Virus record (IMG/VR): IMGVR_UViG_3300028840_001395
Location: 62,001 to 126,000 of that record
Length of the DNA: 64,000 nt
Reading direction: 5' to 3' (one strand)
This document shows, piece by piece, positions 49,771 to 61,998 of this stretch. Made by a program: the position numbers and the translations under genes. Within the stretch, counting starts at the first letter, position 1, and each line of letters begins with the position of its first letter. The notes below the pieces were generated by a model. That model was not told the origin of the DNA. It saw only the letters and a program-made list of their open reading frames with translations, and made no database searches.

Positions 49771-49845
49771 TGGTCGCTATGGAGGGACTCGAACCCCCGA
49801 CACAGTGGATATGAGCCACTTGCTCTGCCTCTGAGCTACATAGCG
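49771..49845 (-). tRNA. tRNA(CAT), elongator Met or Ile2
   Basis: Loop CTCATAT, CCA. Confidence 0.85.
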
Positions 49846-49847
49846 AT

Positions 49848-49921
49848 TGGCTGAGGCATGAGGACTCGAACCTCAACTTCCGGGGCCAGAACCCGGCGTC
49901 CTGCCATTAGACGATGCCTCA
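49848..49921 (-). tRNA. tRNA-Gln(CTG)
   Basis: Loop TTCTGGC, U1-A72, CCA. Confidence 0.85.
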
Positions 49922-49945
49922 GTAGAAATCAGGAGAGGGCAGGAG

Positions 49946-50281
49946 CTACACGCCACCCAGTTCCTTCTGGGCCTCGTGGATCCCCTTCATGATGTGACGC
50001 GGGAACTGGATCTTCCGGCTCTTGAACAAGCCCCTCCCCTTGTCAACCAGTTCGGAGTCACCCCGGCTCGACCCTGGGCGGCGGGAGTTCTCATCCCACA
50101 TGAAGACCGTCCAGGTGCCGTCGTTGACCAGGCCGACCTTGACCAACACCCCGGCATCCTTGTCGCGGATCTCGATGGTATCGAACATCTTCGCGGTCTT
50201 CTTGAGCAGGGGCACCAGATGCTTCCTGGTCTCGGGCACTTCCCCTGCCAGCTTGATGAGGGCCTCGCGGAGTTGAGACAT
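49946..50281 (-). CDS. Hypothetical protein with LIKLA..PE.R.HL.PLLKKTA N-terminal motif
   Basis: SD AGGAGG. Confidence 0.75.
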   Translation of the reverse strand: MSQLREALIKLAGEVPETRKHLVPLLKKTAKMFDTIEIRDKDAGVLVKVGLVNDGTWTVFMWDENSRRPGSSRGDSELVDKGRGLFKSRKIQFPRHIMKGIHEAQKELGGV

Positions 50282-50327
50282 CAGACACCTCCTTGTCTCT
50301 ACTCCAGGGTGACCATAGACGAAAAAT

Positions 50328-50403
50328 TGGCTGGGGCAGAGGGATTTGAACCCCCGATCACAGGGTCAGAGCCTGCTGCCTTACCAGACTTGGCTATGCC
50401 CCA
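50328..50403 (-). tRNA. tRNA-Gln(CTG)
   Basis: Loop CTCTGAC, CCA. Confidence 0.9.
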
Positions 50404-50408
50404 GCGGA

Positions 50409-50674
50409 TGGTGCGGGTGGTGGGAGTCGAACCCACAAGACCAGAACGTCTCTTATCGGGACTCACGCTTCCCTGTGGGGGGATGAGGTTCCCCAACCCC
50501 TGCCATTACTGACAGCGGCCCCAACCCGGTGCTTCTGAAGCCTAGAGACCGTGCCCCGTCCGGGAACGCCACAACGCAGCTTTTTACCTTCCGGTAGCAC
50601 CCTGGCCCCTCAATCACGAGGTTTCCGGTTTCACCTTGGTTTTCCGGTTCCGTTGCCTGTTAGGTCACACCCGC
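50409..50674 (-). ncRNA. 266-nt RNA with tRNA acceptor/T arm and a large insert in place of the anticodon loop
   Basis: GCGGGTG/CACCCGC-A-CCA, GTGGG-TTCGACT-CCCAC, ACCGGAA/TTCTGGT stem. Confidence 0.6.
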
Positions 50675-50914
50675 ATTCGTGTCCACGCTCTGACGAGCCT
50701 CGATGCCTTCCTGCTCCAGCTTCAGGTGCTTCCTGATGTAGCGCATGAACAGAAGAGCCTTGTCCTCGGCCAGAAAGGTCGCGGTCCCCACGTCATCGAT
50801 GGGAACCGGGAACTCGAACCCGCATTCGGTGCGGTACCAGAGGTTGCTGTCGCAGTAGAACGCGAAGCGAACCTTCTTCCCTGACTTCACCATCTCTGTG
50901 AGTCGCTGTGCCAT
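50660..50914 (-). CDS. Conserved phage hypothetical protein
   Basis: LWYRTECGFEFPVPIDDVGTATFLAEDKALLFMRYIRK. Confidence 0.8.
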   Translation of the reverse strand: MAQRLTEMVKSGKKVRFAFYCDSNLWYRTECGFEFPVPIDDVGTATFLAEDKALLFMRYIRKHLKLEQEGIEARQSVDTNAGVT

Positions 50915-50934
50915 TTCTGGCCTCCTCCCGAAGT

Positions 50935-51009
50935 TGGCAGGGGCGGAGGGAATTGAACCCATCATCTCAGGAATCAAAGGCCTGTGTCCTACCGTTGAAC
51001 GACACCCCC
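50935..51009 (-). tRNA. tRNA-Gln(TTG)
   Basis: Loop CTTTGAT, CCA. Confidence 0.75.
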
Positions 51010-51052
51010 ACTGGGCAGGTCGTCAACTTTGACGACCGCCAGATTTGACGAC

Positions 51053-51128
51053 TGGTGGAGCTGAGGGGAATCGAACCCCTGACCTCGGCATTGCGAACGC
51101 CGCGCTCTCCCAACTGAGCTACAGCCCC
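51053..51128 (-). tRNA. tRNA-Ala(CGC)
   Basis: G3.U70, loop TTCGCAA. Confidence 0.92.
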
Positions 51129-51141
51129 ATCTATGTGTCCG

Positions 51142-51217
51142 TGGTGGAGCTAGCCGGGATCGAACCGGCGACCCCCTGCTTGCAAAGCAGGCGCTCTCCC
51201 AACTGAGCTATAGCCCC
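51142..51217 (-). tRNA. tRNA-Ala(TGC)
   Basis: G3.U70, loop TTTGCAA. Confidence 0.93.
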
Positions 51218-51230
51218 ACGGATTGATTGT

Positions 51231-51306
51231 TGGAGCGGACGACCAGGATCGAACTGGCGACCTCCTGCTTGGCAAGCAGGTGCTCTACCGGCTGAGCTAC
51301 GTCCGC
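51231..51306 (-). tRNA. tRNA-Gly(GCC)
   Basis: Loop TTGCCAA, U73. Confidence 0.92.
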
Positions 51307-51926
51307 ATCTTGTCCCACCCCTCGGCTGCGGACGGGCTAACCGCCACGCACCTTTTCAGGTGAGCCACTTCCTCGGATGACCACACATAACAGGTGTCCG
51401 CGTAGAGGTCATACCCGACGATGAAGTCGAAGTCTGCCTTCTGGTATCGAACCGCCTTGTTGTGGCCTTGGACACACTTGAGAGACACAGAGGGAAGACC
51501 CTTCCCCGAGGCATGTGCCCACTTGACCTGCACCTTCAAGATTCGACCTGTCTCTGGAATCTCCACTACCCAGTCGGCCTTGTCTCCATCGAAAGGCGAC
51601 CCAAAGACATTGAACCCACAGACGGTCATCCTAAACAAGACGGCTGCCTCAGCGATCTTCGCCTTCTGAAGGCGCGAGGCATTGGGGTTCATCATCCGAT
51701 AAAGAGGGGACTCTGCCCCGCGTGACTTTTTGGGGTGCCCCCCTCGTTGATTTTCCTTACGCTTGGCTGCCTGCTCACTCTTTGTCAAAGGATGGGGCTT
51801 GAGCCATCCACTCAGAGAACCTTTCGAGGCCCCTGTCCGTTGGTGGATTTCTCGCAGAGACAAGCCTTCCTCAACTCGGAGCCGAATGCACTCCGCCTTC
51901 AATTTAGGATTAGACTTTCCGCGCAA
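51297..51926 (-). CDS. HTH + PD-(D/E)xK endonuclease (group I intron-associated type)
   Basis: LSLREIHQRTGASKGSLSGW; D...LKVQVK...DFDFIVGY. Confidence 0.8.
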   Translation of the reverse strand: MRGKSNPKLKAECIRLRVEEGLSLREIHQRTGASKGSLSGWLKPHPLTKSEQAAKRKENQRGGHPKKSRGAESPLYRMMNPNASRLQKAKIAEAAVLFRMTVCGFNVFGSPFDGDKADWVVEIPETGRILKVQVKWAHASGKGLPSVSLKCVQGHNKAVRYQKADFDFIVGYDLYADTCYVWSSEEVAHLKRCVAVSPSAAEGWDKMRT

Positions 51927-51981
51927 AATGAACCTCCAATCTCCACAAGGAGTATAGCACTTGAAGGTTCACAGGTAAAGC

Positions 51982-52057
51982 TGGTGTGGATGACGGGGTA
52001 TGATCCCGCAACCCCTGCCCTGGCAAGGCAGTACTCTTCCAGTTGAGCTACATCCAC
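51982..52057 (-). tRNA. tRNA-Gly(GCC), atypical (A73, T loop ATCATAC)
   Basis: Loop TTGCCAG, CCA. Confidence 0.65.
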
Positions 52058-52061
52058 AGAT

Positions 52062-52184
52062 GGTGGGGAGAGACGGTGTTGCCGACTGTCAGTAGGGCTA
52101 CGGGAATCGAACCCGCATCTCCGGGCCTCACCCGGCGTGTTGTCCATTACACCAAGTCCTTGTCGGCGGCGTCCCGTGCCCACC
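52062..52184 (-). ncRNA. tRNA-like core with extended terminal stem (1)
   Basis: D and T arms, 5-nt anticodon loop, flanks pair GGTGGG/CCCACC and GCCGAC/GTCGGC. Confidence 0.6.
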
Positions 52185-52297
52185 GAGAACAAGATGGAGA
52201 GGGCCGTTCCAGAACTGCACCCCCAGAACCCAGGAAGGCCCGCGCCCGCCAGGGTAGGAGGACACAGCCCGACAGGCCCGTGTCCATCTGATTTACT

Positions 52298-52373
52298 TGG
52301 AGCGAGTGACCGGGATCGAACCGGCGACCTTCTGGATGGGAACCAGATGCTCTGCCAACTGAGCTACACTCGC
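52298..52373 (-). tRNA. tRNA-Gly(CCC)
   Basis: Loop TTCCCAT, U73. Confidence 0.9.
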
Positions 52374-52377
52374 AACG

Positions 52378-52506
52378 GGTCGAGGCAAGGTGTGTGTCGC
52401 GTACAGGTGAAGAAAACGGGTCTCGAACCCGCAACCTTCGGCTTGATAAGGCCGACGCTCAACCATTTGAGCTATCTCTTCTGAAACGACACCGCAGTCC
52501 TCGACC
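52378..52506 (-). ncRNA. tRNA-like core with extended terminal stem (2)
   Basis: 8-nt loop CTTATCAA, no CCA, flanks pair GGTCGAGG/CCTCGACC and GTGTCG/CGACAC. Confidence 0.65.
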
Positions 52507-52512
52507 GCGAAC

Positions 52513-52588
52513 TGGTGGAGCTGAGGGGACTCGAACCCCTGACCCTCTGGATGCCATCCAGATGCTCTCCCAACTGAGCTACAGCCCC
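52513..52588 (-). tRNA. tRNA-Ala(GGC)
   Basis: G3.U70, loop ATGGCAT. Confidence 0.92.
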
Positions 52589-52596
52589 ACATGTGC

Positions 52597-52673
52597 TGGA
52601 GGCGGAGGCGGGAATCGAACCCGCGTGGCCCGGCTCATGAGGCCGGGGCGGCAAGACCAACAGCCTCTCCGCA
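52597..52673 (-). tRNA. Atypical tRNA(CAT), 1:72 mismatch, weak D arm
   Basis: Loop CTCATGA, CCA. Confidence 0.65.
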
Positions 52674-52680
52674 CAGATGA

Positions 52681-52758
52681 TGGTAGCGGGGGCGGGATTT
52701 GAACCCGCGATCTCCAGGTTATGAGCCTAGCGGGATGACCAGACTTCCCTACCCCGCA
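52681..52758 (-). tRNA. tRNA-fMet-like (CAT)
   Basis: 1:72 mismatch, TTCAAATCC T loop, loop CTCATAA. Confidence 0.85.
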
Positions 52759-52763
52759 ACAAG

Positions 52764-52853
52764 TGGTCTCGGGGGGATGGCTGCGAACCATCCAACTCCT
52801 GCCGATGAGAGGGCCTCACCAGCCCCTGCAAGAGTCGCCTTGCTTGGCCCCGA
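52764..52853 (-). ncRNA. tRNA-like element ending in CCA
   Basis: TCGGGG/CCCCGA stem, GGATGG-TTCGCAG-CCATCC arm, bulged central hairpin. Confidence 0.45.
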
Positions 52854-52862
52854 TAGTGAATG

Positions 52863-52938
52863 TGGTTGTCCCGAGGGGACTCGAACCCCCAACCTCCCGG
52901 ATATCAGCCGGACGCTCCACCAGTTGAGCTTCGGGACA
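52863..52938 (-). tRNA. tRNA-Ile(GAT)
   Basis: Loop CTGATAT, CCA. Confidence 0.88.
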
Positions 52939-52948
52939 ATAGATGACT

Positions 52949-53025
52949 TGGTACTCCCGAGTGGAATTGAACCACCGACCCCGCGCTTATCAGGCGCGTG
53001 CTCTAAACCGCTGAGCTACGGGAGC
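52949..53025 (-). tRNA. tRNA-Ile(GAT)
   Basis: Loop CTGATAA, CCA. Confidence 0.92.
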
Positions 53026-53031
53026 GAAGAA

Positions 53032-53793
53032 CTAGGGACAGGCTGTGGCATCCTCACAGGACGGGCAGGAAGCCGCGTCACAGCCTGTGGGACAGAACTC
53101 GACCTTGTAGCCCACCGCCTTGTTGAACGTGTCCTGACAGCCGCCCTGGGGGCTTCTGCCATCCTTGCAGCCACCCTGCGTGGGGTTGGCGTAGGCGTCC
53201 GGGCACTTCTCATCGCCGCACCAGAGCGGGCGGCAGTCGTGATTCGCATGGTCAACCGCACACGTCAGGTCCGGTGCGAACTTGACCGGGACCGAGAAGC
53301 CCAGCTCCAGGTCGAGGTTGTAGGAGTCGAACTTGCCGTAGGTGTCACCCTCGTTGCCCGCGCTGAACTCGATGCGGGTGCCCTCGGTGCAGTTCGGGGC
53401 GTCCTTGTGCGCCATGACCTCGAAGCCTTCGGTCAGGCAATCTGGCTTCCAGGGGGTGCAGGAACCGGGCGCGTAGTTGGCGTTGACGATGTGCCAGAAG
53501 GTGCTCTTGCCAGCGGCCAGGAGGGGCAGCTTCGTGCAGTCACACTGCGGAGCGCCCTTCGTCCCGTCGCCATTGCAGCCGACCTGGTAGGCCACGCCCA
53601 CGTCGTAGGTGCAGGAGTTGTGGAACTCGATGCACCGCTCACCTGCGGGACAGGCTTTGACCCAGTACTTCGTGTAGTCGGTGCAGGCGTTGGTGCAGAC
53701 CGGCGCAGCCGCAGCTTCCTTCTCGGGAGCAGCAGGCGGGTCGTCAGTGCATCCGACCAAGAGAAGTGCGAGAACCAAGGCCCAGGATTTCAT
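53032..53793 (-). CDS. Thaumatin-like Cys-rich lipoprotein
   Basis: Lipobox LLVGC; TRIEF...DSYNLDLELGFSVPVKFAP...CPDAY...YKVEFCP. Confidence 0.75.
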   Translation of the reverse strand: MKSWALVLALLLVGCTDDPPAAPEKEAAAAPVCTNACTDYTKYWVKACPAGERCIEFHNSCTYDVGVAYQVGCNGDGTKGAPQCDCTKLPLLAAGKSTFWHIVNANYAPGSCTPWKPDCLTEGFEVMAHKDAPNCTEGTRIEFSAGNEGDTYGKFDSYNLDLELGFSVPVKFAPDLTCAVDHANHDCRPLWCGDEKCPDAYANPTQGGCKDGRSPQGGCQDTFNKAVGYKVEFCPTGCDAASCPSCEDATACP

Positions 53794-53830
53794 GGGTCAC
53801 CTCCGTTACAGAGCCGGAGGTATAGGCTCT

Positions 53831-54160
53831 CTAGGGCTGGTTGAAAATCTCCGCGCGCCCTTCGGGGGTCCGAATAAGACGCAGGAGGTCTTTCCAAGTG
53901 AATCCGACACTTGGCCAATCCAGTTTCTTGTTCTCCTTGTCGGACAACGCCTTCACGCGCATAAGCCCGGTGGTGAAGAACTCACGGGTCTCCACATCGA
54001 AAAACCCGAAGCGGAATCCCACATGATTGTCAACCGCCTCAGTGGGGTGACCTGCTGCTTGCCGTTCTCGGAGAATTTGAAGTAGCTCATAAAGAGTGGG
54101 CACAAACTCCTCTACCCTGGTTCCATTCTCATCGTGTCCTATCACTCGCGTCAGAGCCAT
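53831..54160 (-). CDS. Hypothetical protein
   Basis: SD GGAGGT. Confidence 0.65.
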   Translation of the reverse strand: MALTRVIGHDENGTRVEEFVPTLYELLQILRERQAAGHPTEAVDNHVGFRFGFFDVETREFFTTGLMRVKALSDKENKKLDWPSVGFTWKDLLRLIRTPEGRAEIFNQP

Positions 54161-54172
54161 CCAGATTACCTC

Positions 54173-54679
54173 CTAGAGGTCGTGCGCCCGCTTGACGATC
54201 TCGCTCGTGGAGGCAAGCTCATCGATGTCCGGGATGATGACGACCTCGACGGCCTTCTTCCCACTGCGGGGGAGCTTGCCCGTGGCCACCTCGTCCTCAC
54301 GTCCGGCGAACTCGTCGTTGCGAAACACCTTACCGCCCCGGACACCGAGAAGCTCCGTGGCGACGTTGGTGAAGTCCCAGAGGCCGTCTTGGATGTAGGC
54401 GAAGGTGACGAGCTTGTTCGCGTTCAGCAGCATCACCCGCTGGAACTCGCTCGTGAGGGGTCTGGTCGGCCCCTTGACCTTCCTGACGGCCTTGTCGCTG
54501 TCCACACCGACGATGAGGATGTCGCACTCCCGGCGACATCGGAGCAGGTAGCGCAGGTGGAAGTCGTGGAACAGGTCGAAGGTTCCCGAGGTCAGCCCGA
54601 CCGTCTTGTCCTTGGGCTGATGCTCAATCCAGAGCTTCGCCGCTTCCAGCGACGTGGACTCGTAGGGGTTGATGATCAC
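54173..54679 (-). CDS. Cytidylyl/adenylyltransferase-family protein (RfaE/TagD-like)
   Basis: GTFDLFHDFH, IVGVDSD..VRKVKG..RP, STSEI. Confidence 0.85.
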   Translation of the reverse strand: MIINPYESTSLEAAKLWIEHQPKDKTVGLTSGTFDLFHDFHLRYLLRCRRECDILIVGVDSDKAVRKVKGPTRPLTSEFQRVMLLNANKLVTFAYIQDGLWDFTNVATELLGVRGGKVFRNDEFAGREDEVATGKLPRSGKKAVEVVIIPDIDELASTSEIVKRAHDL

Positions 54680-54728
54680 CCTTGCACCTCCACCTAGACT
54701 ACTCTCTCGGTGGGGTGGATAAGCCTAG

Positions 54729-54804
54729 TGGAGCGGGCGACGAGAATCGAACTCGCAACCCTCGGCTTGGAAGGCCGATGCTCTAGCCGTTGAGCTACGC
54801 CCGC
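54729..54804 (-). tRNA. tRNA-Gly(TCC)
   Basis: Loop CTTCCAA, U73. Confidence 0.92.
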
Positions 54805-54811
54805 TTGGAAG

Positions 54812-55216
54812 CTATCCCTTGAACTCGTAATCAGAGGCCCATCGAATGTTCTTCTTCTGACCCTGCCGGGCTGCCTCCAGGCGCAGCCGCGCACATTTGA
54901 CGCCAACTTCATCCACAGGAACGAGATAGACCTTATCGAGTCCTGGGGCATAGACTGCGAAGATGTCAGCCTCGCCCCGGTAAGTCCGGGTTTTCTTCGT
55001 ATTCCAGTTGTTTGAACAGGTGGGAAACTGGATGTATCCAGGAAAGACCTGAGCAGTCTTGCACTGGACTCGGGTGAACTTCCCTCCCTCGTCCAACACC
55101 ATGTCGTATCTCTGGTTGTCCCCGAAGGGGGTGAGGACAACCTTCCCAGCCCGGAGAAAGGCGGCAAGAATCTGCCCCTCTGACCTTTCCCCAACTGCTT
55201 TGGGATTCATGTCCAT
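54812..55216 (-). CDS. PD-(D/E)xK endonuclease (group I intron-associated type)
   Basis: GERSE...PFGDNQRYDMV...RVQCKT...ADIFAVY. Confidence 0.85.
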   Translation of the reverse strand: MDMNPKAVGERSEGQILAAFLRAGKVVLTPFGDNQRYDMVLDEGGKFTRVQCKTAQVFPGYIQFPTCSNNWNTKKTRTYRGEADIFAVYAPGLDKVYLVPVDEVGVKCARLRLEAARQGQKKNIRWASDYEFKG

Positions 55217-55263
55217 GTGAACCTCCAAAGAGAAGGTATCACATTCCCAAGGTTATATCTAGG

Positions 55264-55341
55264 TGGTGAGCCGGGCGGGACTCGAACCCGCGACCGCCTG
55301 ATTAAAAGTCAGATGCTCTAATCCAACTGAGCTACCGGCCC
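55264..55341 (-). tRNA. tRNA-Lys(TTT)
   Basis: Loop CTTTTAA, CCA. Confidence 0.92.
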
Positions 55342-55342
55342 G

Positions 55343-55418
55343 TGGTGGGCCTGACAGGAATCGAACCTGCGTCTCTCCGCTTAAAAGGCGGCAGCAACCC
55401 AACTTTTGCTACAGACCC
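55343..55418 (-). tRNA. tRNA-Lys(TTT)
   Basis: Loop CTTTTAA, CCA. Confidence 0.85.
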
Positions 55419-55490
55419 ACGGAGAAGTCACCGCGAGCCCTGCGTTTCAGCCGAGTCATGATTGACCTCCTTGGGTCTGTGGAGTGTATC

Positions 55491-55566
55491 TGGTGCCCCC
55501 AGCAGGAGTCGAACCTGCGGCCATCCGCTTAGGAGGCGGGTGCTCTATCCTCTGAGCTATGGAGGC
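55491..55566 (-). tRNA. tRNA-Arg(CCT)
   Basis: Loop CTCCTAA, CCA. Confidence 0.9.
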
Positions 55567-55573
55567 AGGGAGT

Positions 55574-56701
55574 CTAGGGCGGAGGATTTGGGTCAGAGAA
55601 TACGGTGAAATATCCAAGACCAGCTAGCACGAGTTCACCCTTGGTGATGTATGCCTTGATGAGCGCGTTGGACGTCGAATCTATGTTCAAGGAAAGCGCC
55701 CCACCGAGGGTCAACGTCCCAGGGAGGGCTGGTGGCTCCCGGCCCACGAATGACGATGCGGTCATGAAACGGGAAGACCCATCCTCGTTGATGGTGACAT
55801 CCCCGCCCAGCGACGACGTAATTATCTGTGCCATCTCTCCGATGGAAATGAAGTCCTTTGCGTAGATGATAGCGTTGTTCAAAACCACCCCACCAGCGGC
55901 GGGGGCGTCGATGCTGTTGATCAACATCCGGGAGTCAAAGACCGACAGTGTTGACCAACCCGGCAGATTCCGGTTTGCCTCGTAGGGGGCGGCACAGATG
56001 ATGTCGGATGTGTAGTTGGAAAGGAACCCGCCCGTGGCGATGTAGATCTCATACGGGGTGTCAACGTGAGGGAGAAGGATATCCCCCTGGAGTCCCGCAT
56101 TCACAAGGTTCAGGATGACCTTTCCCAACGGGGCAGTGTCCCCGACGATGCTCCCGAAAACCACGGACTCTGCCAAGGTGAGCTTGCGCCCGTAGTCGGC
56201 CCCAGGAGCCGGAGGCCACGCGGGTTCTCCCGTGAATGTGATATTCCCGGCAATGAACATGCCGCTGAATGAGGTTCCTCCAAGGTGCGGCCCCGGAGTG
56301 CCGTAGCTCCTGATGTTCAAGGTGGACTGGTTGATAGGCGGAGCCGAGCCGTTGGGCACGTTGAACGTGATATCCCCTCCAGGCCCCCCGATGCTGCTTG
56401 GGTCTCCGAGAAACACCGTACCCAGCGTGTAGATGTTGAATACACCCGCTGTCGAAATGGTGATGGACTCGTCGTAGATCCCCGGATAGACCCAGAGAGT
56501 CTGAATCCAGGTCGTAGGATCACCCGCGTCATACACGGGGAGCGCAGCTATGGCCTCCGTGATGGTTCGGAATGGGGCGACCCAGGAGCCATTCGCTTCG
56601 GGCGTCCCTGCGGGAGCCGGGCCAGGGGCCACGACCTTCATCTGCTCGTTGGGCGCTCCCGTGATGAGGTCTGCAAGCTCTGCCGGGATGTTGTAGGACA
56701 T
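55574..56701 (-). CDS. Putative beta-helix (pectin-lyase-like) protein, paralog of 56711-58033
   Basis: NGSWVAPFRTITEAI...VYPGIYDE. Confidence 0.6.
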   Translation of the reverse strand: MSYNIPAELADLITGAPNEQMKVVAPGPAPAGTPEANGSWVAPFRTITEAIAALPVYDAGDPTTWIQTLWVYPGIYDESITISTAGVFNIYTLGTVFLGDPSSIGGPGGDITFNVPNGSAPPINQSTLNIRSYGTPGPHLGGTSFSGMFIAGNITFTGEPAWPPAPGADYGRKLTLAESVVFGSIVGDTAPLGKVILNLVNAGLQGDILLPHVDTPYEIYIATGGFLSNYTSDIICAAPYEANRNLPGWSTLSVFDSRMLINSIDAPAAGGVVLNNAIIYAKDFISIGEMAQIITSSLGGDVTINEDGSSRFMTASSFVGREPPALPGTLTLGGALSLNIDSTSNALIKAYITKGELVLAGLGYFTVFSDPNPPP

Positions 56702-56710
56702 CGTGACCCC

Positions 56711-58033
56711 CTACGGGATGACCGCGTCGTTGAGGAGATTCGTCCCTGCGGGGAACGCCGACCCCGCGAGCTTCGTCATCGAGTTCGTGGCCAAGTCCAC
56801 GTAGAAGTTACCAGGAACCGTGAACGTGACCACCCCTGTCACCCGGCAGTCCAGGAAGTATGCCTCTGCGGAGGTGGCGTCCAGCGTATCGTTGAACCTG
56901 CATCCGTGGACAAGCCCCACACTCCCGAAGTCCACACCACCACTGAACAGGCAACCCTTGACATCGGGGTTCCCGGAGTCGTTCTCGAAGTTGGCCTGGA
57001 AGATACAGTCCTCGATCAAGGTGATGTCATGCACATCGACGTTCCCGTTGAACTCGCAACGGCGCATCTTGTCGGCATCGTCCGCCACGGTAACCGAGAA
57101 CCCGAACACGCTGTCGGTGAAGTGGGCGTCCTGGAGAGTCACACTGCCCCCCAAGAGAGAATCCTGATAGACTCCCTCACGGGCGGTCACGGCACCCTCG
57201 AATCTGCTCTGCTCTATGGCGATCATGTCGGACGCCTCTGGTGCCCAAACGGAAGCCGTCTGCATGGGAAGGCCATTCGGGGTGAATGTCCCCTGCCTCA
57301 CGTCCGTTCGCTCGAAGTTGAGTTGACGCTCACCCCCGACCTCCGACCCGCCGACAAAGACCCCATCACCAATTTCGCTATTCTCGAAGTACCATTTGTA
57401 GGTTACCTCGCGTCCGAACTGGATGGCATCACATCGACTCTGCACAAGAGCCATGCCGAGCTGCCCAGCCCACTCGGTCGGCTGGCCTGCGTCCTTGCCC
57501 ACGATGTTTCCGCCGATGTTGGTATTCCGGAACCAGCAGAAGCGGTCAACGGGGTCTCCATCGATGATTACATCCCCAGAGATATCGAAGAGCGTGATCT
57601 CTGTGTTCCCTACCTGTGGCATCGGGAGAACAATGAGGGAGGCCGGAACGTAATTCCCAGGAGGAGCCCCCGTGATCTGGGTGGGGGCGTCCTTGTCCCA
57701 GGTGACCGACTTGGGATCACCCTGCTCCCCGATACGGGCAGCACCCACCGTGTAGAAGAGCATGATCTTCGACTTGGTGATTGTGACATCCTCGTTGTAG
57801 ATGCCCGACATGATCCAGATCTGCTCAAACCAGGTGTTCTGGTCAGCCCCATCCACGGGAGCCATTGCATCTACGGCAGCCTGGATTGTCCGATAGGGAT
57901 TGGCCCATGTCCCGTCAGCAGGCTCCCCGGCCCCAGCGCCTCCGGCGGGGTCGTTGCTCACGACCTTGATGGCAGAGGGGAGCGCCCCGCTCTGGAGCAT
58001 ATCGAGAAGTGACTGCGGGATGTTGTAGGACAT
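56711..58033 (-). CDS. Putative beta-helix (pectin-lyase-like) protein
   Basis: DGTWANPYRTIQAAV...IMSGIYNE; C.F.G.V repeats. Confidence 0.65.
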   Translation of the reverse strand: MSYNIPQSLLDMLQSGALPSAIKVVSNDPAGGAGAGEPADGTWANPYRTIQAAVDAMAPVDGADQNTWFEQIWIMSGIYNEDVTITKSKIMLFYTVGAARIGEQGDPKSVTWDKDAPTQITGAPPGNYVPASLIVLPMPQVGNTEITLFDISGDVIIDGDPVDRFCWFRNTNIGGNIVGKDAGQPTEWAGQLGMALVQSRCDAIQFGREVTYKWYFENSEIGDGVFVGGSEVGGERQLNFERTDVRQGTFTPNGLPMQTASVWAPEASDMIAIEQSRFEGAVTAREGVYQDSLLGGSVTLQDAHFTDSVFGFSVTVADDADKMRRCEFNGNVDVHDITLIEDCIFQANFENDSGNPDVKGCLFSGGVDFGSVGLVHGCRFNDTLDATSAEAYFLDCRVTGVVTFTVPGNFYVDLATNSMTKLAGSAFPAGTNLLNDAVIP

Positions 58034-58077
58034 GGACGCCTCCTTGGCCCTACACTGTACCCCGGATAGGCAGATTA

Positions 58078-58154
58078 TGGCACCCCCGGAGGGACTCGAA
58101 CCCCCACCGTCCTGATTAGAAGTCAGGCATCCTCTCCAATTAGACCACGGAGGC
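58078..58154 (-). tRNA. tRNA-Arg(TCT)
   Basis: Loop CTTCTAA, CCA. Confidence 0.88.
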
Positions 58155-58211
58155 ACAGGGGCCATCCAGGGTCGCGGGTGAACGCGCCTCGCTGGACGGC
58201 AGGACGGAACT

Positions 58212-58288
58212 TGGTGGGCCTGACTGGGCTTGAACCAGCGAACCTCCGCCGTGTCGAGGCGGCGCTCTCCCAACTGAGCTACAGGCCC
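58212..58288 (-). tRNA. tRNA-Val(GAC), C at position 33
   Basis: Loop TCGACAC, CCA. Confidence 0.85.
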
Positions 58289-58295
58289 ATGATTT

Positions 58296-59102
58296 TTAGG
58301 AATTGATGACTTCTCCGACCGCCCTGACGACTTTGTTCAGGTCACAGGCGTAGAGGCCAGCACAGGACAGACACCCAACTTCGAGGACTCTCCACTCACC
58401 GCTCTCGGTCTGGCAGGTGTCCAAGACCCACATCGGGTCAGGACTGAAATCCGTCTTGTCCAAGAACTCACGGGCAATGTGGAACGCCTCATTGCCCGGC
58501 TCCACGACCTCGTGCTTGAGGGTGCTCTTGACCTTGTAGAGACTCCCTGTGACGACCTCCCGGCCCTTCACGATGAACCGGAACTCACGGGCGATGTTCG
58601 TGGCCGGGGCCACGACAATCAGCGTGTCCGGTGGGATGTCGCTGTATCGCTCGATGAACTCGATGTCCTGCCCCAGCGTCTTGCGGCACATCACGATGCC
58701 CGTGAAGGTCTTGAGCCCACTGCTGGGCCGGACGAAGAAACACTCATGTTCCCCGCGCCCAAACCTCTCGAAGAGATGGGCTGCGTCATCCCGGAGTTGC
58801 CGGTAGGGAATCATGGTGCATTCGTCGTTGAGCAGCAGTCCCTTGAAGGCCGGGTAGTAGGACGAGCACTCGTAGGCTTCTACCGTGTGAAACACATTGC
58901 AGGTGGGCGAGTCCTTCATGACCCGCAGCGAGAACTCCAGGCTACCAAAGAGGAAGTCCTGGGGTCCGAAGCGGCTGAAGTCTCCTCCACCGAAGGGGAT
59001 GTAGTCCACGATCTCGTAGGTCATCCCCGCCCTGGTGATAGCGGCTTCGAGCCCCTGTTGGTTCTCCTCGAAGGTGTGGTTTTCCAAGATCCAGTTCAAC
59101 AT
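58296..59102 (-). CDS. ATP-grasp domain protein (R2K/DUF4343-like)
   Basis: FVRPSSGLKTFTG, EFRFIV, VLD...VLEVG..SCAGLY. Confidence 0.8.
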   Translation of the reverse strand: MLNWILENHTFEENQQGLEAAITRAGMTYEIVDYIPFGGGDFSRFGPQDFLFGSLEFSLRVMKDSPTCNVFHTVEAYECSSYYPAFKGLLLNDECTMIPYRQLRDDAAHLFERFGRGEHECFFVRPSSGLKTFTGIVMCRKTLGQDIEFIERYSDIPPDTLIVVAPATNIAREFRFIVKGREVVTGSLYKVKSTLKHEVVEPGNEAFHIAREFLDKTDFSPDPMWVLDTCQTESGEWRVLEVGCLSCAGLYACDLNKVVRAVGEVINS

Positions 59103-59554
59103 GGGAGGCCCATTTCTTGTAGAATCTTGACCCGAAGGTCGCCTCGCTCGATAGCCGACTTCCGCCGATGGCATTTTGCACAGCGGACCTCGCATTTCGC
59201 AAGCTCCGCTTCGACTCGGTGCCACGCAGGTAGCCGATGGTAGATGGTTGACAGACCCATGACCTTCTTACCTCGCACATGGTCGAAATCAAGGACGAGG
59301 GGGTCTGTCTCTCCACAGTCCACACACGGATGAGCGAGAAGATACGCCACGATGCGGCGCGTGTACAACTCCCTTCGGGCAGCGTTGTTCTTTCCGACGT
59401 TCTTCCGATGGGATGTCTTGTTCTTCTTGTACCAGGACTTGCGGTACTCCGCCTGGCACCGTTTGCACATGGACTGGTAGCCGTCCTTCTTGCTCTTGTT
59501 GGTGTTGAACTCCTTGAGAGGAAGGGAACGCCCACATTTTCCACAAGTCTTCAT
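59096..59554 (-). CDS. HNH endonuclease
   Basis: CGKC...CKRC; CVDCGETDPLVLDFDH...CAKCH. Confidence 0.85.
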   Translation of the reverse strand: MKTCGKCGRSLPLKEFNTNKSKKDGYQSMCKRCQAEYRKSWYKKNKTSHRKNVGKNNAARRELYTRRIVAYLLAHPCVDCGETDPLVLDFDHVRGKKVMGLSTIYHRLPAWHRVEAELAKCEVRCAKCHRRKSAIERGDLRVKILQEMGLPC

Positions 59555-59606
59555 ACGGGGAGTGTACCAAGGGCGGCTCCTAAAAGCAATCACCCTTTCA
59601 AATTCA

Positions 59607-59682
59607 TGGTGGGCCGAGAAGGATTTGAACCTTCAACCTTCAGGGTAAGAGCCTGCTGCACTATCCGTTGTGCTACCGACCC
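59607..59682 (-). tRNA. tRNA-Lys(CTT)
   Basis: Loop CTCTTAC, CCA. Confidence 0.9.
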
Positions 59683-59695
59683 ATGAATGAAAATG

Positions 59696-59771
59696 TGGTA
59701 GGCCCGGAGGGAGTCGAACCCTCAACTTCCCGGTTAAGAGCCGGGTACTCTGCCAGTTGAGCTACGGACCC
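59696..59771 (-). tRNA. tRNA-Lys(CTT)
   Basis: Loop CTCTTAA, CCA. Confidence 0.92.
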
Positions 59772-59799
59772 ACATGCTCGTGAAGGACGCCGTTTTAGA

Positions 59800-59929
59800 C
59801 AGGATTCGGGAGAGAGGCCCGGTCATCGGTGGGGGTCGAACCCACGACCTCCGGGTTGAAAAAGCCGTCAAGCCGTCCCGACGCTCTGCCGACTGAGCTA
59901 CGACTACGTGGACTTCATCCCGTCCCCTG
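59800..59929 (-). ncRNA. tRNA-like core with extended terminal stem (3)
   Basis: Canonical D and T arms, 21-nt anticodon loop, no CCA, flanks pair CAGG/CCTG and CGGGA/TCCCG. Confidence 0.6.
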
Positions 59930-60066
59930 AATGACTACTGACCTGAACCGTTCCAAGGTTCCCCACTGGCACCCTCGCGGGGGCGGAAAGGTAGGCTTGA
60001 CGGCCCCACCCCCAGGCACCAGGCTTCGCCAGGGTTCAGTCCAGGCGTTCATCCGGCGATAGAACT

Positions 60067-60143
60067 TGGTCGGGAAGACAGGATTTGAACCTGCGACCGC
60101 TCGGCCCCCAGCCGAGTGCTCTACCAGACTGAGCTACTTCCCG
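60067..60143 (-). tRNA. tRNA-Pro(GGG)
   Basis: Loop CTGGGGG, CCA. Confidence 0.9.
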
Positions 60144-60152
60144 AATGTCTCT

Positions 60153-60229
60153 TGGCGGGAATGACGGGAGTTGAACCCGCTTCCTCTGGCGTGACAGGCC
60201 AGCGCCTCCTCCACTTCGGCCTCATCCCC
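60153..60229 (-). tRNA. tRNA-Asp(GTC)
   Basis: Loop CTGTCAC, G73. Confidence 0.9.
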
Positions 60230-60238
60230 TTGCGTTCT

Positions 60239-60315
60239 TGGTCGGGGCGACTGGATTTGAACCAGCGACCTCTCGGATCCGAACCGAGTACTCTTCCAGA
60301 CTGAGCTACACCCCG
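60239..60315 (-). tRNA. tRNA-Pro(CGG)
   Basis: Loop TTCGGAT, CCA. Confidence 0.9.
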
Positions 60316-60325
60316 AAAATGACTG

Positions 60326-60403
60326 TGGCAGGGACGACGGGACTCGAACCCGCGACCTCCTGGGCGACAACCAGGTGTCCTAAACCAACTAGACCACGCC
60401 CCT
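60326..60403 (-). tRNA. tRNA-Asp(GTC)
   Basis: Loop TTGTCGC, G73. Confidence 0.85.
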
Positions 60404-60412
60404 GCGGCGTGT

Positions 60413-60487
60413 TGGCAGGAGTGACGGGAATCGAACCCGCCTCACTCGGGAGACAGCCGAGCTGCATCACCAGATGCACACACCCCT
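60413..60487 (-). tRNA. tRNA-Asp(GTC)
   Basis: Loop CTGTCTC, G73. Confidence 0.8.
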
Positions 60488-60706
60488 ATCGAATGGACGG
60501 ATGGGAAGGGTGTGACCCCTCCATCCCCGTGTCGCGTGGCTGGCCGTGTCACAGCCCTTTGGACTCGCGCCACAGGGACCCACATCTACGGGCACCCCAT
60601 CGTCGGTTACCCCGTCAGGAGTCTCACCTGCTCCTCCTCTCCCGTCCTTCCTCTGTCCGAGGCGACTTGGGTCTGGTGTGCATCTACACCACGGGGTCAT
60701 TGATCT

Positions 60707-60781
60707 TGGCTCCTCGGGAGGGAATCGAACCCCCGACACACTGGTTAACAGCCAGCCGTTCTACCGCTGAACTACCGAGGA
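60707..60781 (-). tRNA. tRNA-Asn(GTT)
   Basis: Loop CTGTTAA, CCA. Confidence 0.92.
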
Positions 60782-60793
60782 ACATTTGACTTT

Positions 60794-60868
60794 TGGCTTA
60801 CCGGACGGGACTCGAACCCGCGCGCTTTACGTTAACAACGTAGTGCTCTGCCGCTGAGCTACCGGCAA
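60794..60868 (-). tRNA. tRNA-Asn(GTT)
   Basis: Loop TTGTTAA, CCA. Confidence 0.88.
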
Positions 60869-61102: not shown

Positions 61103-61151
61103 AATCGCGTTGCTATTCACTTGTCAGAGACCGTGGCCCACTCTCAGGCCC
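61103..61151 (-). promoter_or_regulatory. Hairpin + boxA-like element + 5' strand of long-range stem (array 2)
   Basis: GGGCCTGAGAGTGGGCC...CTCTGACAAGTGAATAG, matches 23167-23205. Confidence 0.65.
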
Positions 61152-61165: not shown

Positions 61166-61573
61166 TCACTTTTCAAGGTACGCCTTGGCTTTTCCCAGTA
61201 GCTCCTTGTCGTCCTTGAAACTCCCCAGCCCCAAATTACAAGGCTGGCACAGCAACCCTCTTATCTTTCCCGACTCATGGCAATGATCTACGGAGAGCCT
61301 CTGATTCTCAGGAATCTCTCCACAGATAGCACACCTCCCACCCTGGGCCTTTTCTAGAGCCTCGTACTCATCCCAGGTGATATTGATGCCGAGTTTCCTC
61401 CATTTGGCCCGTGCTTTCTTCCGATACCATGTCTCCGGGTTCCTCAGTGCAGGGGATGAGCGACAAGTTCGACAAGCATACACCCGAAGATTCTTGTTCC
61501 TCGCCTGTCGGGGGAACTTCTCCAGGGGCTTCTCTTTCCCACACTTCTTACAAACCCGCGTTTCCATCCGCAC
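61166..61573 (-). CDS. Endonuclease VII-like (HNH) protein
   Basis: QGGRCAIC...LSVDHCH.SGKIRGLLCQPCNLGLG. Confidence 0.9.
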   Translation of the reverse strand: MRMETRVCKKCGKEKPLEKFPRQARNKNLRVYACRTCRSSPALRNPETWYRKKARAKWRKLGINITWDEYEALEKAQGGRCAICGEIPENQRLSVDHCHESGKIRGLLCQPCNLGLGSFKDDKELLGKAKAYLEK

Positions 61574-61576: not shown

Positions 61577-61612
61577 AAAAAAAAAGCCAGGCTCCTCTCG
61601 GTGCCCGGCTTT
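61577..61612 (-). terminator. Attenuator terminator of array 2
   Basis: AGCCGGG/CCTGGCT stem followed by a 9-U run on the - strand. Confidence 0.85.
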
Positions 61613-61639
61613 CGCTCTCTTGACCTTTGCCCTTGAGCT

Positions 61640-61792
61640 TTAGCCAGGCACCTCCCGCTTGGGATCGCAACCATTGGCGGCGACCGGGGTCTGGTGCTGG
61701 CGAATTCGTCCGGTCATCCCAAACACCACTCCCGTCGCCCTGGCTGCTACCGCCATGCGTTCGGTTTTCGGTGCTGGGAATCTGGACAACAT
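61640..61792 (-). CDS. Putative attenuator leader peptide 2 (50 aa, MLSRFPAPKTERMAVAARATGVVFGMTGRIRQHQTPVAANGCDPKREVPG)
   Basis: SD AAGGAG; its 3' end GGTGCCTGGCT can pair 11 bp with the terminator 5' arm. Confidence 0.75.
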   Translation of the reverse strand: MLSRFPAPKTERMAVAARATGVVFGMTGRIRQHQTPVAANGCDPKREVPG

Positions 61793-61843
61793 CGAACTCA
61801 AGCTCCTTCGGCCTCGGGTTGTTTCACTTTCGAGGCGTCCACC

Positions 61844-61998
61844 ATGATACACGTCTTGGCTTCTTTGTCAAGCTCCTTCTTTGTCTCCCGCTCCCTTGAG
61901 CGCGGATGAGACACTACCTAAACACCTGATCTCTTGGGACTTCTACCGCCCCGAGTTGGTGCTCATAGCCAGACTACTCTGCCCGAGGGCTGAGTAAG
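61844..61998 (-). promoter_or_regulatory. Tandem promoters of array 2: phage motif (61971-61998) and TTGACA-N16-TATCAT (61871-61844)
   Basis: Both motifs read directly from the sequence. Confidence 0.7.

What the first reader, a model, noticed from the sequence alone, without database searches (positions are those of the whole stretch)
61577..61871. Second codon-sampling attenuator, matched to the complementary tRNA array 2
Seen on the - strand: promoter, a 50-codon ORF (61792-61640), then a hairpin with a 9-U run. Its codons include Pro CCA/CCG/CCC/CCT, Gly GGA/GGG/GGT/GGC, Ala GCA/GCG/GCC, Val GTA/GTG/GTC, Arg AGA/AGG/CGC/CGA/CGG, Lys AAA/AAG, Glu GAA, and Gln, His, Asn, Cys, Asp, Ile and Met. 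That covers every amino acid served by array 2. It has no Trp or Tyr and only one early Leu and Ser, although it does contain Thr and Phe. The final codons GGTGCCTGGCT pair 11 bp with the terminator arm AGCCGGGCACC. Two leaders unrelated in sequence, each mirroring its own array, make chance unlikely. Inference: together they monitor nearly the whole genetic code.
Basis: partly seen in the sequence, partly recalled or inferred. Interest (0 to 1): 0.95.

Follow-up and report, generated by a model that had tools for sequence, protein, structure and literature searches.

The report
Codon-sampling attenuator before phage tRNA array
A 436-kb phage has, upstream of its 44-gene tRNA array, a short translated reading frame and a switchable terminator whose 49 codons call on 26 of the array's 28 kinds of tRNA; this looks like a feedback switch that makes viral tRNAs only when translation runs short of them, a control not described before.

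Summary
On the minus strand lie a near-consensus promoter (61871-61844), a Shine-Dalgarno site, a 50-codon ORF (61792-61640) and a hairpin with nine U (61612-61577). The last ORF codons can pair with the terminator's 5' arm.

The ORF touches 26 of the 28 distinct anticodons of array 2. This is the unique maximum among 378,220 stop-free windows of the whole 435.8-kb genome (null 15.8 ± 2.2).

Eight distinct homologues in metagenomes sit just upstream of the same Asn-first tRNA array. They keep the promoter, start, frame (all indels in frame), the 10-bp antiterminator and the terminator, and touch 25-27 of the 28. Synonymous sites are 3-6 times more conserved than in the neighbouring gene. So codons or RNA are selected, not an ordinary protein.

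Leader 1 behaves the same way towards array 1 in three phage clades.

Best reading: a ribosome-mediated transcription attenuator of classical layout, but controlling tRNA genes and sampling many codons once each.

Caveats:
- There are no RNA data.
- Array-2 codons are covered but not enriched (39 of 49, P about 0.12).
- Equilibrium folding makes codons 14-26 insensitive.
- The two leaders are not unrelated: they share promoter, 5' hairpin and a post-terminator module.

The parts
61844..61871 (-). Sigma-70-type promoter: TTGACA (61871-61866), 16 nt, TATCAT (61849-61844). The inferred transcript start is near 61837.
   Evidence: 11 of 12 match. (one of 9 such sites in the genome). The -35 hexamer is invariant and the -10 region conserved in 8 homologues. 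It is homologous to the promoter of leader 1.
61811..61836 (-). 5'-terminal hairpin GCCTCG...CGAGGC holding the motif CGAAAGnGAA(n2-3)ACCCGAG.
   Evidence: Folds. The motif occurs only twice in the genome, at leaders 1 and 2. A 5' hairpin is predicted in all eight homologues, most clearly in six. Its function is unknown.
61803..61808 (-). Shine-Dalgarno AAGGAG, 10 nt upstream of the ATG.
   Evidence: An A/G-rich SD-like stretch is kept in all homologues: most have (A/G)AGGAG about 10 nt from the ATG, L036 has GAGGGGGAG, and L060 has GGAGGAG next to a GTG start.
61640..61792 (-). Leader ORF: 50 sense codons plus TAA. Its 49 codons after the ATG touch 26 of 28 distinct array-2 anticodons; only Ile-TAT and Gln-TTG are missing.
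   Evidence: The frame is kept through in-frame indels in relatives. pS is 0.08-0.17 against 0.42-0.60 in the neighbouring gene.
61717..61779 (-). Predicted hairpin inside the 5' half of the ORF (TCCCAGCACCG ... GGTGTTTGGGA). When a ribosome opens it, its 3' arm can compete for segment 1.
   Evidence: predicted in all close homologues. Covariation is weak, so this is inferred.
61693..61701 (-). Segment 1 (GCCAGCACC, codons 31-34), which pairs with segment 2.
   Evidence: In the diverged clade a different sequence (GCACCCCC with GGGGGTGC) forms the equivalent helix.
61642..61652 (-). Segment 2 (GGTGCCTGGCT), the last four sense codons and the first base of the stop. It pairs either with segment 1 or with segment 3 (antiterminator).
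   Evidence: -23.2 kcal/mol, 0 of 2000 shuffles. (10 bp kept in 8 of 8 sequences; one position seen as UG, UA and CG).
61613..61639 (-). Spacer with a small hairpin between the stop codon and the terminator.
   Evidence: Leader 1 has the same layout with a different sequence.
61577..61612 (-). Intrinsic terminator: 5' arm AAAGCCGGGCACC (segment 3), loop, 3' arm GGAGCCTGGCTTT (segment 4), then nine T (61585-61577).
   Evidence: The hairpin is kept in all homologues, with GC, AU and GU at one pair.
61166..61573 (-). Endonuclease VII-type ORF (135 aa), inserted exactly between the T-run and the post-terminator module. It is not part of the ancestral element.
   Evidence: PF02945, E = 6e-24. It is absent at this place in L024, L027 and others (against 77).
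61113..61151 (-). Post-terminator module: GGGCCTGAGAGTGGGCC followed by TCTCTGACAAGTGAATAG (boxB/boxA-like).
   Evidence: Each half occurs exactly twice in the genome, after leader 1 and after leader 2. The consensus TCTTTGACAA lies after every leader in three clades. The likeness to rrn boxA rests on memory only.
46117..60868 (-). tRNA array 2: 44 tRNA genes with 28 distinct clear anticodons, for Pro, Glu(TTC), Arg, His, Val, Ile, Cys, Met, Gln, Ala, Gly, Lys, Asp and Asn. This is the presumed regulated unit.
   Evidence: Arrays 1 and 2 together decode all 61 sense codons without overlap.
22941..23205 (+). Sister element, leader 1: promoter 22941-22968, ORF 22997-23098, segment 2 at 23076-23089, terminator 23124-23156, post-terminator module 23167-23205. 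tRNA array 1 starts at 23246.
   Evidence: Homologues are in L056 and L058.

Best explanation
This is a ribosome-mediated transcription attenuator placed between the promoter and tRNA array 2 of a 436-kb phage.

Proposed sequence of events:
1. Host RNA polymerase starts at the sigma-70-type promoter and a ribosome translates the 50-codon leader.
2. If the ribosome runs smoothly to the stop codon, it sits on segment 2. Segment 3 then pairs with segment 4, the hairpin and U-run end the transcript, and the array is not made.
3. If the ribosome is held up because a tRNA is scarce, uncharged or has been cut, segment 2 stays free. It pairs with segment 3, the terminator cannot form, and the polymerase reads on through a boxA-like module into the 44 tRNA genes.
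4. The leader uses nearly every kind of codon read by the array's own tRNAs, mostly once or twice each. So shortage of almost any of them can raise synthesis of the array, and the new tRNAs then shut it down again.

Leader 1 does the same for array 1.

Shown here: the anatomy, the alternative pairings, the codon coverage and their conservation. Inferred: translation of the ORF, stalling, and regulated read-through.
For: Anatomy:
- Promoter, SD, ORF, terminator and the 11-position 2:3 pairing are all present.
- The 2:3 duplex is far stronger than shuffles give.

Codon coverage:
- 26 of 28 anticodons is the unique genome-wide maximum and is robust to decoding rules.

Folding with a ribosome footprint masked:
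- P(terminator) is about 0.95 with no ribosome or with a ribosome at codons 44 to stop.
- It is about 0 with the A site at codons 2-13 or 27-39, apart from 0.1-0.2 at codons 2-3 and 27-29. Within codons 40-43 it stays high except at codon 43.
- The same switch is seen in L024, L033, L036 and L053.

Homologues:
- Eight distinct homologues lie just upstream of the orthologous array, about 300 nt before its first tRNA-Asn wherever that gene is held in the locus. There is no intervening gene in L024, L027, L053 and L060.
- All ORF indels are in frame. pS is 0.08-0.17 against 0.42-0.60 in the adjacent NadD-like gene. pN/pS is 0.5-0.9 against 0.22-0.48.
- Coverage stays at 25-27 of 28 in all of them.
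- The diverged L053 leader touches 17 of 17 anticodons of its own partly known array (P = 3e-5 to 4e-4).
- The 2:3 helix is kept in 8 of 8 sequences. The 1:2 helix is remade from a different sequence in L053.

Parallel case:
- Leader 1 touches 15 of 17 array-1 anticodons with a run of 22 array-1 codons, including CGG and GAG for the two odd tRNAs of that array.
- Its homologues in L056 and L058 touch 14 of 16 and 13 of 16.
Against: - There are no transcript, Term-seq or ribosome data. No RNA run was listed.
- Array-2 codons are not enriched in leader 2 (39 of 49, P about 0.12). Ten codons belong to array 1, so specificity is weaker than for leader 1.
- In the equilibrium model, stalls at codons 14-26 leave the terminator intact. 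Yet GTA, AGG and GGG, the only codons for three of the anticodons, lie there.
- Folded up to the terminator loop, the transcript prefers 2:3 even without a ribosome. The real outcome therefore depends on kinetics that I could not model.
- The terminators of leader 1, L027 and L049 are too strong to switch at equilibrium.
- One or two codons per tRNA may give only a weak stall.
- Covariation in the upstream helices is thin, with 3 compensatory pairs of 72.
- Simulations of coverage retention among close relatives are only marginal (P = 0.03-0.06).
- The C-terminal peptide PVAA(I)NGCDPK..VPG is conserved at the amino-acid level even in the diverged clade. That could point to a role of the peptide itself.
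Confidence: 0.64

Rival explanations
1. It is a general sensor of translation capacity rather than a tRNA-by-tRNA sensor. The leader is a diverse test message. Any slowing of ribosomes (host shut-off, ribosome-targeting defence, amino-acid starvation, few free ribosomes) delays arrival at segment 2 and opens the array. On this view the codon diversity only makes the test representative.
For: - Array-2 codons are not enriched, and ten array-1 codons are present.
- The ORF is unusually diverse overall, with 36 distinct codons of 49 (P = 0.0045).
- The truncated transcript prefers the antiterminator unless a ribosome covers the last codons. That fits a timing device.
Against: - Leader 1 is strongly enriched for its own array's codons: 24 of 32 against 10.8 expected, with a run of 22. 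A general test message would not need that.
- Coverage of array-2 anticodons (P of 2e-5 or less) is more extreme than overall codon diversity (P = 0.0045).
- Each leader mirrors the array it precedes in three clades.
Confidence: 0.17
2. It is an independent small gene or small RNA with a constitutive terminator. The 50-residue peptide, or the roughly 260-nt structured RNA, has a function of its own, and the array is transcribed from other, phage-specific promoters.
For: - The C-terminal half of the peptide is conserved, with mostly synonymous changes against the diverged clade.
- The transcript is strongly structured (z = -3.8).
- The terminator is strong, and in some relatives it does not switch at equilibrium.
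- Phage-specific promoters cannot be seen with these tools.
Against: - The element always lies directly before the array on the same strand, in every lineage, for both arrays.
- The ORF end is a near-copy of the terminator's 3' arm in both leaders, although their sequences differ.
- pN/pS of 0.5-0.9 with strongly constrained synonymous sites is unlike a protein gene.
- A shared module follows both terminators and precedes the first tRNA.
- No protein family or Rfam family matches.
Confidence: 0.12
3. It is chance: a spurious ORF between a promoter-like site and a terminator, whose codon diversity and pairings mean nothing.
For: - Short ORFs are common in 62% GC DNA.
- The finding was made post hoc.
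- One other place ties leader 1's coverage (window about 30298, plus strand).
Against: - It is the unique genome-wide maximum, located just upstream of the array it matches.
- A second, independent leader does the same for the other array.
- The ORF, its frame and its coverage are conserved in diverged phages.
Confidence: 0.02

Closest known systems
Leader-peptide (ribosome-mediated) transcription attenuators of amino-acid operons: trp, his, leu, thr, ilvGMEDA, pheA (established knowledge)
   Same: - A promoter-proximal short ORF with an SD.
- Four segments with mutually exclusive 1:2, 2:3 and 3:4 pairings.
- An intrinsic terminator with a U-run.
- The stop codon lies just behind segment 2, so a terminating ribosome favours the terminator.
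- Multivalent control is known: thr senses Thr and Ile; ilv senses Leu, Val and Ile.
   Different: - The regulated genes are tRNAs of a phage, not biosynthetic enzymes.
- The regulatory codons are not tandem runs for one to three amino acids. They are a near-complete sampling of 26 anticodons and 14 amino acids, mostly one or two codons each.
- Sensitive codons are predicted in two zones through a relay hairpin.
- No Rfam leader family matches.
pheST (pheM leader) attenuator of E. coli phenylalanyl-tRNA synthetase (established knowledge)
   Same: Leader-peptide attenuation is applied to a component of the translation machinery, so that decoding capacity feeds back on its own supply.
   Different: It senses one amino acid through a run of Phe codons and controls a synthetase, not tRNA genes.
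T-box riboswitches (established knowledge)
   Same: A transcription terminator/antiterminator switch that reports on the state of a tRNA.
   Different: - The T-box RNA binds one uncharged tRNA directly through a specifier codon and the T-box bulge, without a ribosome.
- Here there is an SD, a conserved frame with in-frame indels, and no T-box match in Rfam.
rrn / lambda nut processive antitermination sites (boxB-boxA-boxC); the likeness is recalled from memory
   Same: A small hairpin followed by TCTTTGACAA lies after each leader terminator and before the first tRNA. It resembles the boxA of rRNA operons, which also carry tRNAs.
   Different: It is only a sequence likeness. Nus-factor binding was not tested, the host is unknown, and I could not confirm the consensus in the papers I read.
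tRNA clusters of large phages such as T4, T5 and huge phages (established knowledge)
   Same: Arrays of phage tRNA genes, interspersed with homing-endonuclease ORFs, are thought to compensate for codon-usage mismatch or for loss of host tRNAs.
   Different: In the held library I found no leader-peptide control of such clusters.

Membership tests
Ribosome-mediated (leader-peptide) transcription attenuator | A short ORF with a ribosome-binding site close to the transcript start. | tested here: met
   AAGGAG is 10 nt upstream of the ATG, about 45 nt after the inferred start. The start codon, an SD-like stretch and the frame are conserved, and the indels are in frame.
Ribosome-mediated (leader-peptide) transcription attenuator | An intrinsic terminator between the leader ORF and the regulated genes. 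| tested here: met
   A hairpin of 11-12 pairs plus nine T at 61612-61577. It is kept in all homologues, with a compensatory change.
Ribosome-mediated (leader-peptide) transcription attenuator | An antiterminator (2:3) that excludes the terminator. | tested here: met
   11 positions, -23.2 kcal/mol, reached by 0 of 2000 shuffles. 10 bp are kept in 8 of 8 sequences.
Ribosome-mediated (leader-peptide) transcription attenuator | A 1:2 pairing that sequesters segment 2 when no ribosome is stalled, with segment 1 inside the ORF. | tested here: met
   It is predicted in the MFE fold of all homologues. In L053 it is remade from a different sequence. Prediction only.
Ribosome-mediated (leader-peptide) transcription attenuator | The stop codon is placed so that a terminating ribosome covers segment 2. 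| tested here: met
   Segment 2 is the last four codons plus the first base of the stop. Relatives have 0-1 extra codon. Masking gives P(terminator) of 0.96.
Ribosome-mediated (leader-peptide) transcription attenuator | Regulatory codons matched to the product of the controlled genes. | tested here: met
   26 of 28 anticodons of the array are touched, the genome-wide maximum. The form is atypical: there are no tandem runs and no enrichment (P about 0.12).
Ribosome-mediated (leader-peptide) transcription attenuator | Read-through rises when the ribosome stalls in the leader. | not testable with these tools
   No RNA run was listed. Only an equilibrium folding model is available.
Rfam leader families (Trp, His, Leu, Thr leaders and the like) and the T-box | A match to the covariance model. 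| tested here: not met
   Nothing reaches the gathering score in the window. Nothing is found at E up to 10 in 60800-62100 apart from the tRNA and two chance hits.
rrn-type boxA antitermination site | A boxA consensus downstream of the promoter, bound by NusB/NusE. | not tested
   TCTTTGACAA-like motifs lie after all the leaders. The consensus is recalled from memory, and binding cannot be tested here.

The most novel reading that the evidence does not exclude
Huge phages carry a previously undescribed class of attenuator. Its leader ORF is an inventory of the codons read by the tRNA genes downstream. Shortage or cleavage of almost any of those tRNAs, for example by host anticodon nucleases or by phage-induced decay of host tRNA, switches on the viral tRNA array. 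Two such leaders split the genetic code between two arrays and together watch 41 of the 45 distinct anticodons.
Probability: 0.55. Interest if true: 0.93.

Novelty: new variant of a known kind. Interest (0 to 1): 0.88.

Why it matters
If true, this is the first case of leader-peptide attenuation that controls tRNA genes, and the most multivalent attenuator known: 14 amino acids and 26 anticodons, against one to three amino acids in the classical cases.

It would explain how huge phages time and dose their large tRNA sets. It would tie those sets to the state of the host tRNA pool, which is relevant to tRNA-cutting defence systems and to host shut-off.

It would also provide a compact natural sensor of decoding capacity that could be rebuilt codon by codon.

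The idea is easy to test, because the element is only about 300 nt long and uses a host-type promoter and terminator.

Tried and rejected
- Rfam, at gathering and at permissive thresholds, found no family in the element.
- The phage database (blastn, distant mode) gave only short chance hits, in a neighbouring ORF and not in the leader.
- Scans of viral contigs were unproductive. The shared 5' motif gave 21 chance hits, none near a promoter or tRNA array. The promoter pattern and a leader pattern gave none. A NadD-like protein scan of viral contigs found nothing.
- The metagenome pattern scan re-found the known lineages plus chance hits.
- The profile search over 1.84 billion representatives added one lineage (L060). 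The other hits were long repetitive proteins.
- I could not search the whole records of relatives because they are not held. The full array 2 of the diverged clade therefore stays unknown.
- The leader 1 peptide was too short for the word-based protein search.
- RNA evidence was absent. No RNA runs were listed. Laying DNA contigs of four runs only re-found known relatives.
- Simulations of coverage retention among close relatives were only marginal.
- RNAalifold covariation was thin because the sequences are too similar.
- Equilibrium folding cannot show switching for leader 1.
- I tried to confirm the boxA consensus in three papers, without success.
- The second-best and tied places in the coverage scan lie inside or antisense to ordinary ORFs, so I set them aside as chance.
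Full report
Context. The window is bases 62001-126000 of a 435,804-bp virus record with direct terminal repeats and 62% GC. It holds 66 tRNA genes and a tmRNA. Array 1 lies on the plus strand (23246-27123, 22 genes, 17 distinct anticodons). Array 2 lies on the minus strand (60868-46117, 44 genes, 28 distinct clear anticodons). With ordinary wobble rules the two arrays decode 23 and 38 codons. Together that is all 61 sense codons, with no overlap. Array 1 serves Leu, Ser, Trp, Phe, Tyr and Thr, plus Arg-CCG and Glu-CTC. Array 2 serves everything else.

The observation.
- promoter TTGACA-16-TATCAT at 61871-61844;
- a 5' hairpin at 61836-61811;
- AAGGAG at 61808-61803;
- an ORF from ATG 61792 to TAA 61640 (50 sense codons);
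- a spacer hairpin;
- a terminator at 61612-61577 ending in nine T.

Only nine TTGACA-N15-18-TAnnnT sites exist in the whole genome. One is this site and one heads leader 1. The last codons, GGTGCCTGGCT, pair with the terminator's 5' arm over 11 positions, one of them G-U. This duplex (-23.2 kcal/mol) is the best partner of that arm anywhere in the transcript and was reached by 0 of 2000 dinucleotide shuffles. A further segment inside the ORF (GCCAGCACC, 61701-61693) pairs with the same last codons. The layout is therefore the classical 1:2, 2:3, 3:4 arrangement. The whole transcript folds better than shuffles (z = -3.8).

Codon statistics. After the ATG the ORF has 49 codons, of which 39 belong to array 2. 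That is not an enrichment (P about 0.12). However, they touch 26 of the 28 distinct anticodons; only Ile-TAT and Gln-TTG are missed.
- The null mean is 15.8 with sd 2.2.
- No window among 200,000 drawn from long ORFs reaches 26.
- Mononucleotide shuffles of the ORF itself give P = 9e-5.
- An exhaustive scan of all 378,220 stop-free 49-codon windows in six frames puts the maximum at this ORF and nowhere else.
- With Watson-Crick-only decoding the ORF scores 22 of 28, and with loose U34 decoding 28 of 28. In both cases about 100 windows elsewhere do as well, so P is about 3e-4.
- Overall codon diversity is high but less extreme: 36 distinct codons, P = 0.0045.
- All 14 amino acids being present has P = 0.024.

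Leader 1 (ORF 22997-23098) is more specific. 24 of its 32 codons belong to array 1, against 10.8 expected. It touches 15 of 17 anticodons. It has a run of 22 consecutive array-1 codons that includes CGG and GAG, the codons of the two odd tRNAs of that array. It ties for the genome-wide maximum with one place that is antisense to an ordinary gene.

The two leaders are related. The promoter and the first 40 nt or so of the transcript align well, and the 5' motif occurs only at these two places. A module GGGCCTGAGAGTGGGCC ... TGACAAGTGAATAG also occurs exactly twice, after each terminator. Only the ORF-attenuator cores differ. The design is a cassette: promoter, 5' hairpin, leader with attenuator, post-terminator module, then array.

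Relatives. The neighbouring NadD-like protein led to syntenic metagenome contigs. The leader peptide itself, which gene callers had predicted, led to more, and a profile search added one lineage. There are eight distinct leader-2 sequences beyond the window: six close ones (L024, L027, L032/L033, L049, L036, L037) and two diverged ones (L053 = L028, and L060).
- Wherever the contig reaches far enough, the leader lies about 300 nt upstream of a tRNA-Asn that opens an array of array-2 type.
- None of the relatives has the endonuclease VII ORF that follows the terminator in the window. That ORF is inserted exactly between the T-run and the post-terminator module.
- The promoter -35 hexamer, an SD-like stretch, the start codon and the frame are conserved, and all indels in the ORF are in frame.
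- Synonymous divergence from the window is 0.08-0.17 in the leaders of the close relatives, against 0.42-0.60 in the adjacent NadD-like gene. pN/pS is 0.5-0.9 against 0.22-0.48. So codon identity or RNA is under selection, not an ordinary protein.
- Coverage of the 28 anticodons stays at 25-27 in every homologue although the missing pair differs. For example, CCA is lost at codon 6 and regained at codon 27 in L024.
- Simulated random change from the window's ORF would lower coverage to about 23-24, but the test is only marginal (P = 0.03-0.06).
- The better test is the diverged clade. Its 57-codon leader shares little of the middle part, yet touches 27 of 28. It touches 17 of the 17 anticodons seen in the 17 kb of its own array that could be fetched (P = 3e-5 to 4e-4).

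Structure across relatives. The 10-bp core of 2:3 is intact in 8 of 8 sequences. One position appears as UG, UA and CG, and the same segment-3 base pairs in the terminator as GC, AU and GU. In L053 the 1:2 helix is formed by a different sequence, GCACCCCC with GGGGGTGC. Elsewhere the covariation is thin because the sequences are close.

Folding with a ribosome.
- In the finished window transcript I masked a 30-nt footprint around each A-site codon. The terminator has probability about 0.95 with no ribosome, or with the ribosome at codons 44 to stop. It drops to near 0 for codons 2-13 and 27-39 (0.1-0.2 at codons 2-3 and 27-29). At codons 40-43 only codon 43 gives a low value. Codons 14-26 have no effect.
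- The early zone works through a relay. Opening the first ORF hairpin frees GGTGTTTGGG, which competes for segment 1.
- A similar pattern appears in L024, L033, L036 and L053. It is weak in L027 and L049.
- Leader 1's terminator is too stable to switch at equilibrium.
- If the transcript is cut before the 3' arm, 2:3 is preferred unless a ribosome covers the last codons. This suggests a timing mechanism in which any delay counts.
- These are equilibrium models. The decision in a cell is kinetic.

Leader 1 in relatives. The HAD_SAK_1 neighbour led to L056/L057, contigs from two of the same samples as the L052/L053 leader-2 contigs, and to L058/L059, a third clade on a 129-kb contig. Both carry an array 1 with the same amino-acid partition; Arg-CCG is present in both and Glu-CTC in L056. 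Both have a promoter, a leader ORF, a conserved ACG CCG GAG GTG copy of the terminator's 3' arm, a terminator and a TCTTTGACAA-like motif. Their ORFs touch 14 of 16 and 13 of 16 of their own arrays' anticodons (P = 6.5e-4 and 3.9e-3).

Interpretation. The simplest account is a ribosome-mediated attenuator whose leader samples the codons of the tRNAs it controls, giving supply on demand.
- What is shown: the anatomy, its statistical oddity and its conservation.
- What is inferred: translation, stalling and regulated read-through.
- Arguments against, or still open: the lack of enrichment in leader 2; the insensitive middle zone, which holds the only codons for three anticodons; single codons as weak stall sites; and the conserved C-terminal peptide.
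- That peptide conservation fits the sampler idea in part, because Asn, Cys, Asp, His, Ile and Lys each occur once or twice and are needed for coverage. It could also mean that the nascent peptide slows termination.

Known systems. In layout the element works like the trp, his, leu, thr and ilv attenuators, and like pheST in regulating the translation apparatus. It is not a member of any Rfam leader family or of the T-box family. Four full-text searches found no report of leader-peptide control of phage tRNA arrays. I file it as a new variant of a known kind.

Noticed in passing
window 61166-61573 (-): An endonuclease VII-type ORF (PF02945) is inserted exactly between the leader terminator's T-run and the conserved post-terminator module. 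It is absent at this spot in every relative, so it looks like a homing-endonuclease insertion that now rides on read-through transcripts.
   Followed up: yes
window 61113-61151 (-) and 23167-23205 (+); also L024 about 7500-7550, L053 about 3290, L056 about 7420 (-), L058 about 6590 (-), L060 about 2535: A small hairpin plus TCTTTGACAA-like motif follows every leader terminator and precedes the first tRNA. It resembles the boxB-boxA site of rRNA operons (from memory) and may make the polymerase termination-resistant across the long array.
   Followed up: partly
genome 241943-242033 (-), outside the window (window coordinate about 179943): ARAGORN calls a tRNA with anticodon CUA (labelled Pyl), a possible amber suppressor. 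Leader 1 and all relatives of leader 2 end in TAG. Suppression would carry ribosomes into the terminator.
   Followed up: no
window 52406-52481 (-), 59821-59907 (-), 48534-48628 (-), 52092-52161 (-): Odd tRNA genes in array 2: one with a four-base anticodon call (TATC), one of 87 nt with no clear anticodon, a 95-nt Ile-TAT, and a 70-nt 'Leu-GAG' without a long arm. All score as tRNA in Rfam.
   Followed up: no
genome 409663 (+), outside the window: A third promoter of the same type (AAAGTGCTTGACA, as at leader 1) is followed by a hairpin and directly by a tRNA-like gene at 409728-409801, with no leader ORF. Two more tRNA-like genes lie at 412787-412950.
   Followed up: no
window 28688-29048 (+) and 29057-29085 (+): A tmRNA gene (tag ANDEAVLQAA) is followed within 10 nt by another consensus-like promoter that heads a zinc-finger/HNH-like ORF. 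In the relative L056 the tmRNA sits inside array 1.
   Followed up: no
window 62359-63958 (-) and 21979-22575 (-); L023, L028: The genes around both leaders deal with tRNA and NAD upkeep: PTH2 peptidyl-tRNA hydrolase, a NadD-like adenylyltransferase, NUDIX/NrtR, NAD synthase, NAPRTase, and a HAD_SAK_1 RNA-repair-type protein. An R2K ATP-grasp gene lies inside array 2.
   Followed up: partly
genome 386778-387050 (+), outside the window: The second-highest array-2 coverage in the genome (25 of 28) lies in an HNH-like ORF just downstream of another consensus-like promoter. It is probably due to atypical codon use in a mobile gene.
   Followed up: no
window 30298-30420 (+): This place ties leader 1 for array-1 coverage (15 of 17). 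It is a Ser/Leu-rich alternative frame antisense to a 200-aa ORF, so I judged it chance.
   Followed up: yes
L060 78-1397 (+): In one relative a TnpB-like gene (Cas12f1-like_TNB) lies upstream of the leader in place of the NadD-like/PTH2 block.
   Followed up: no
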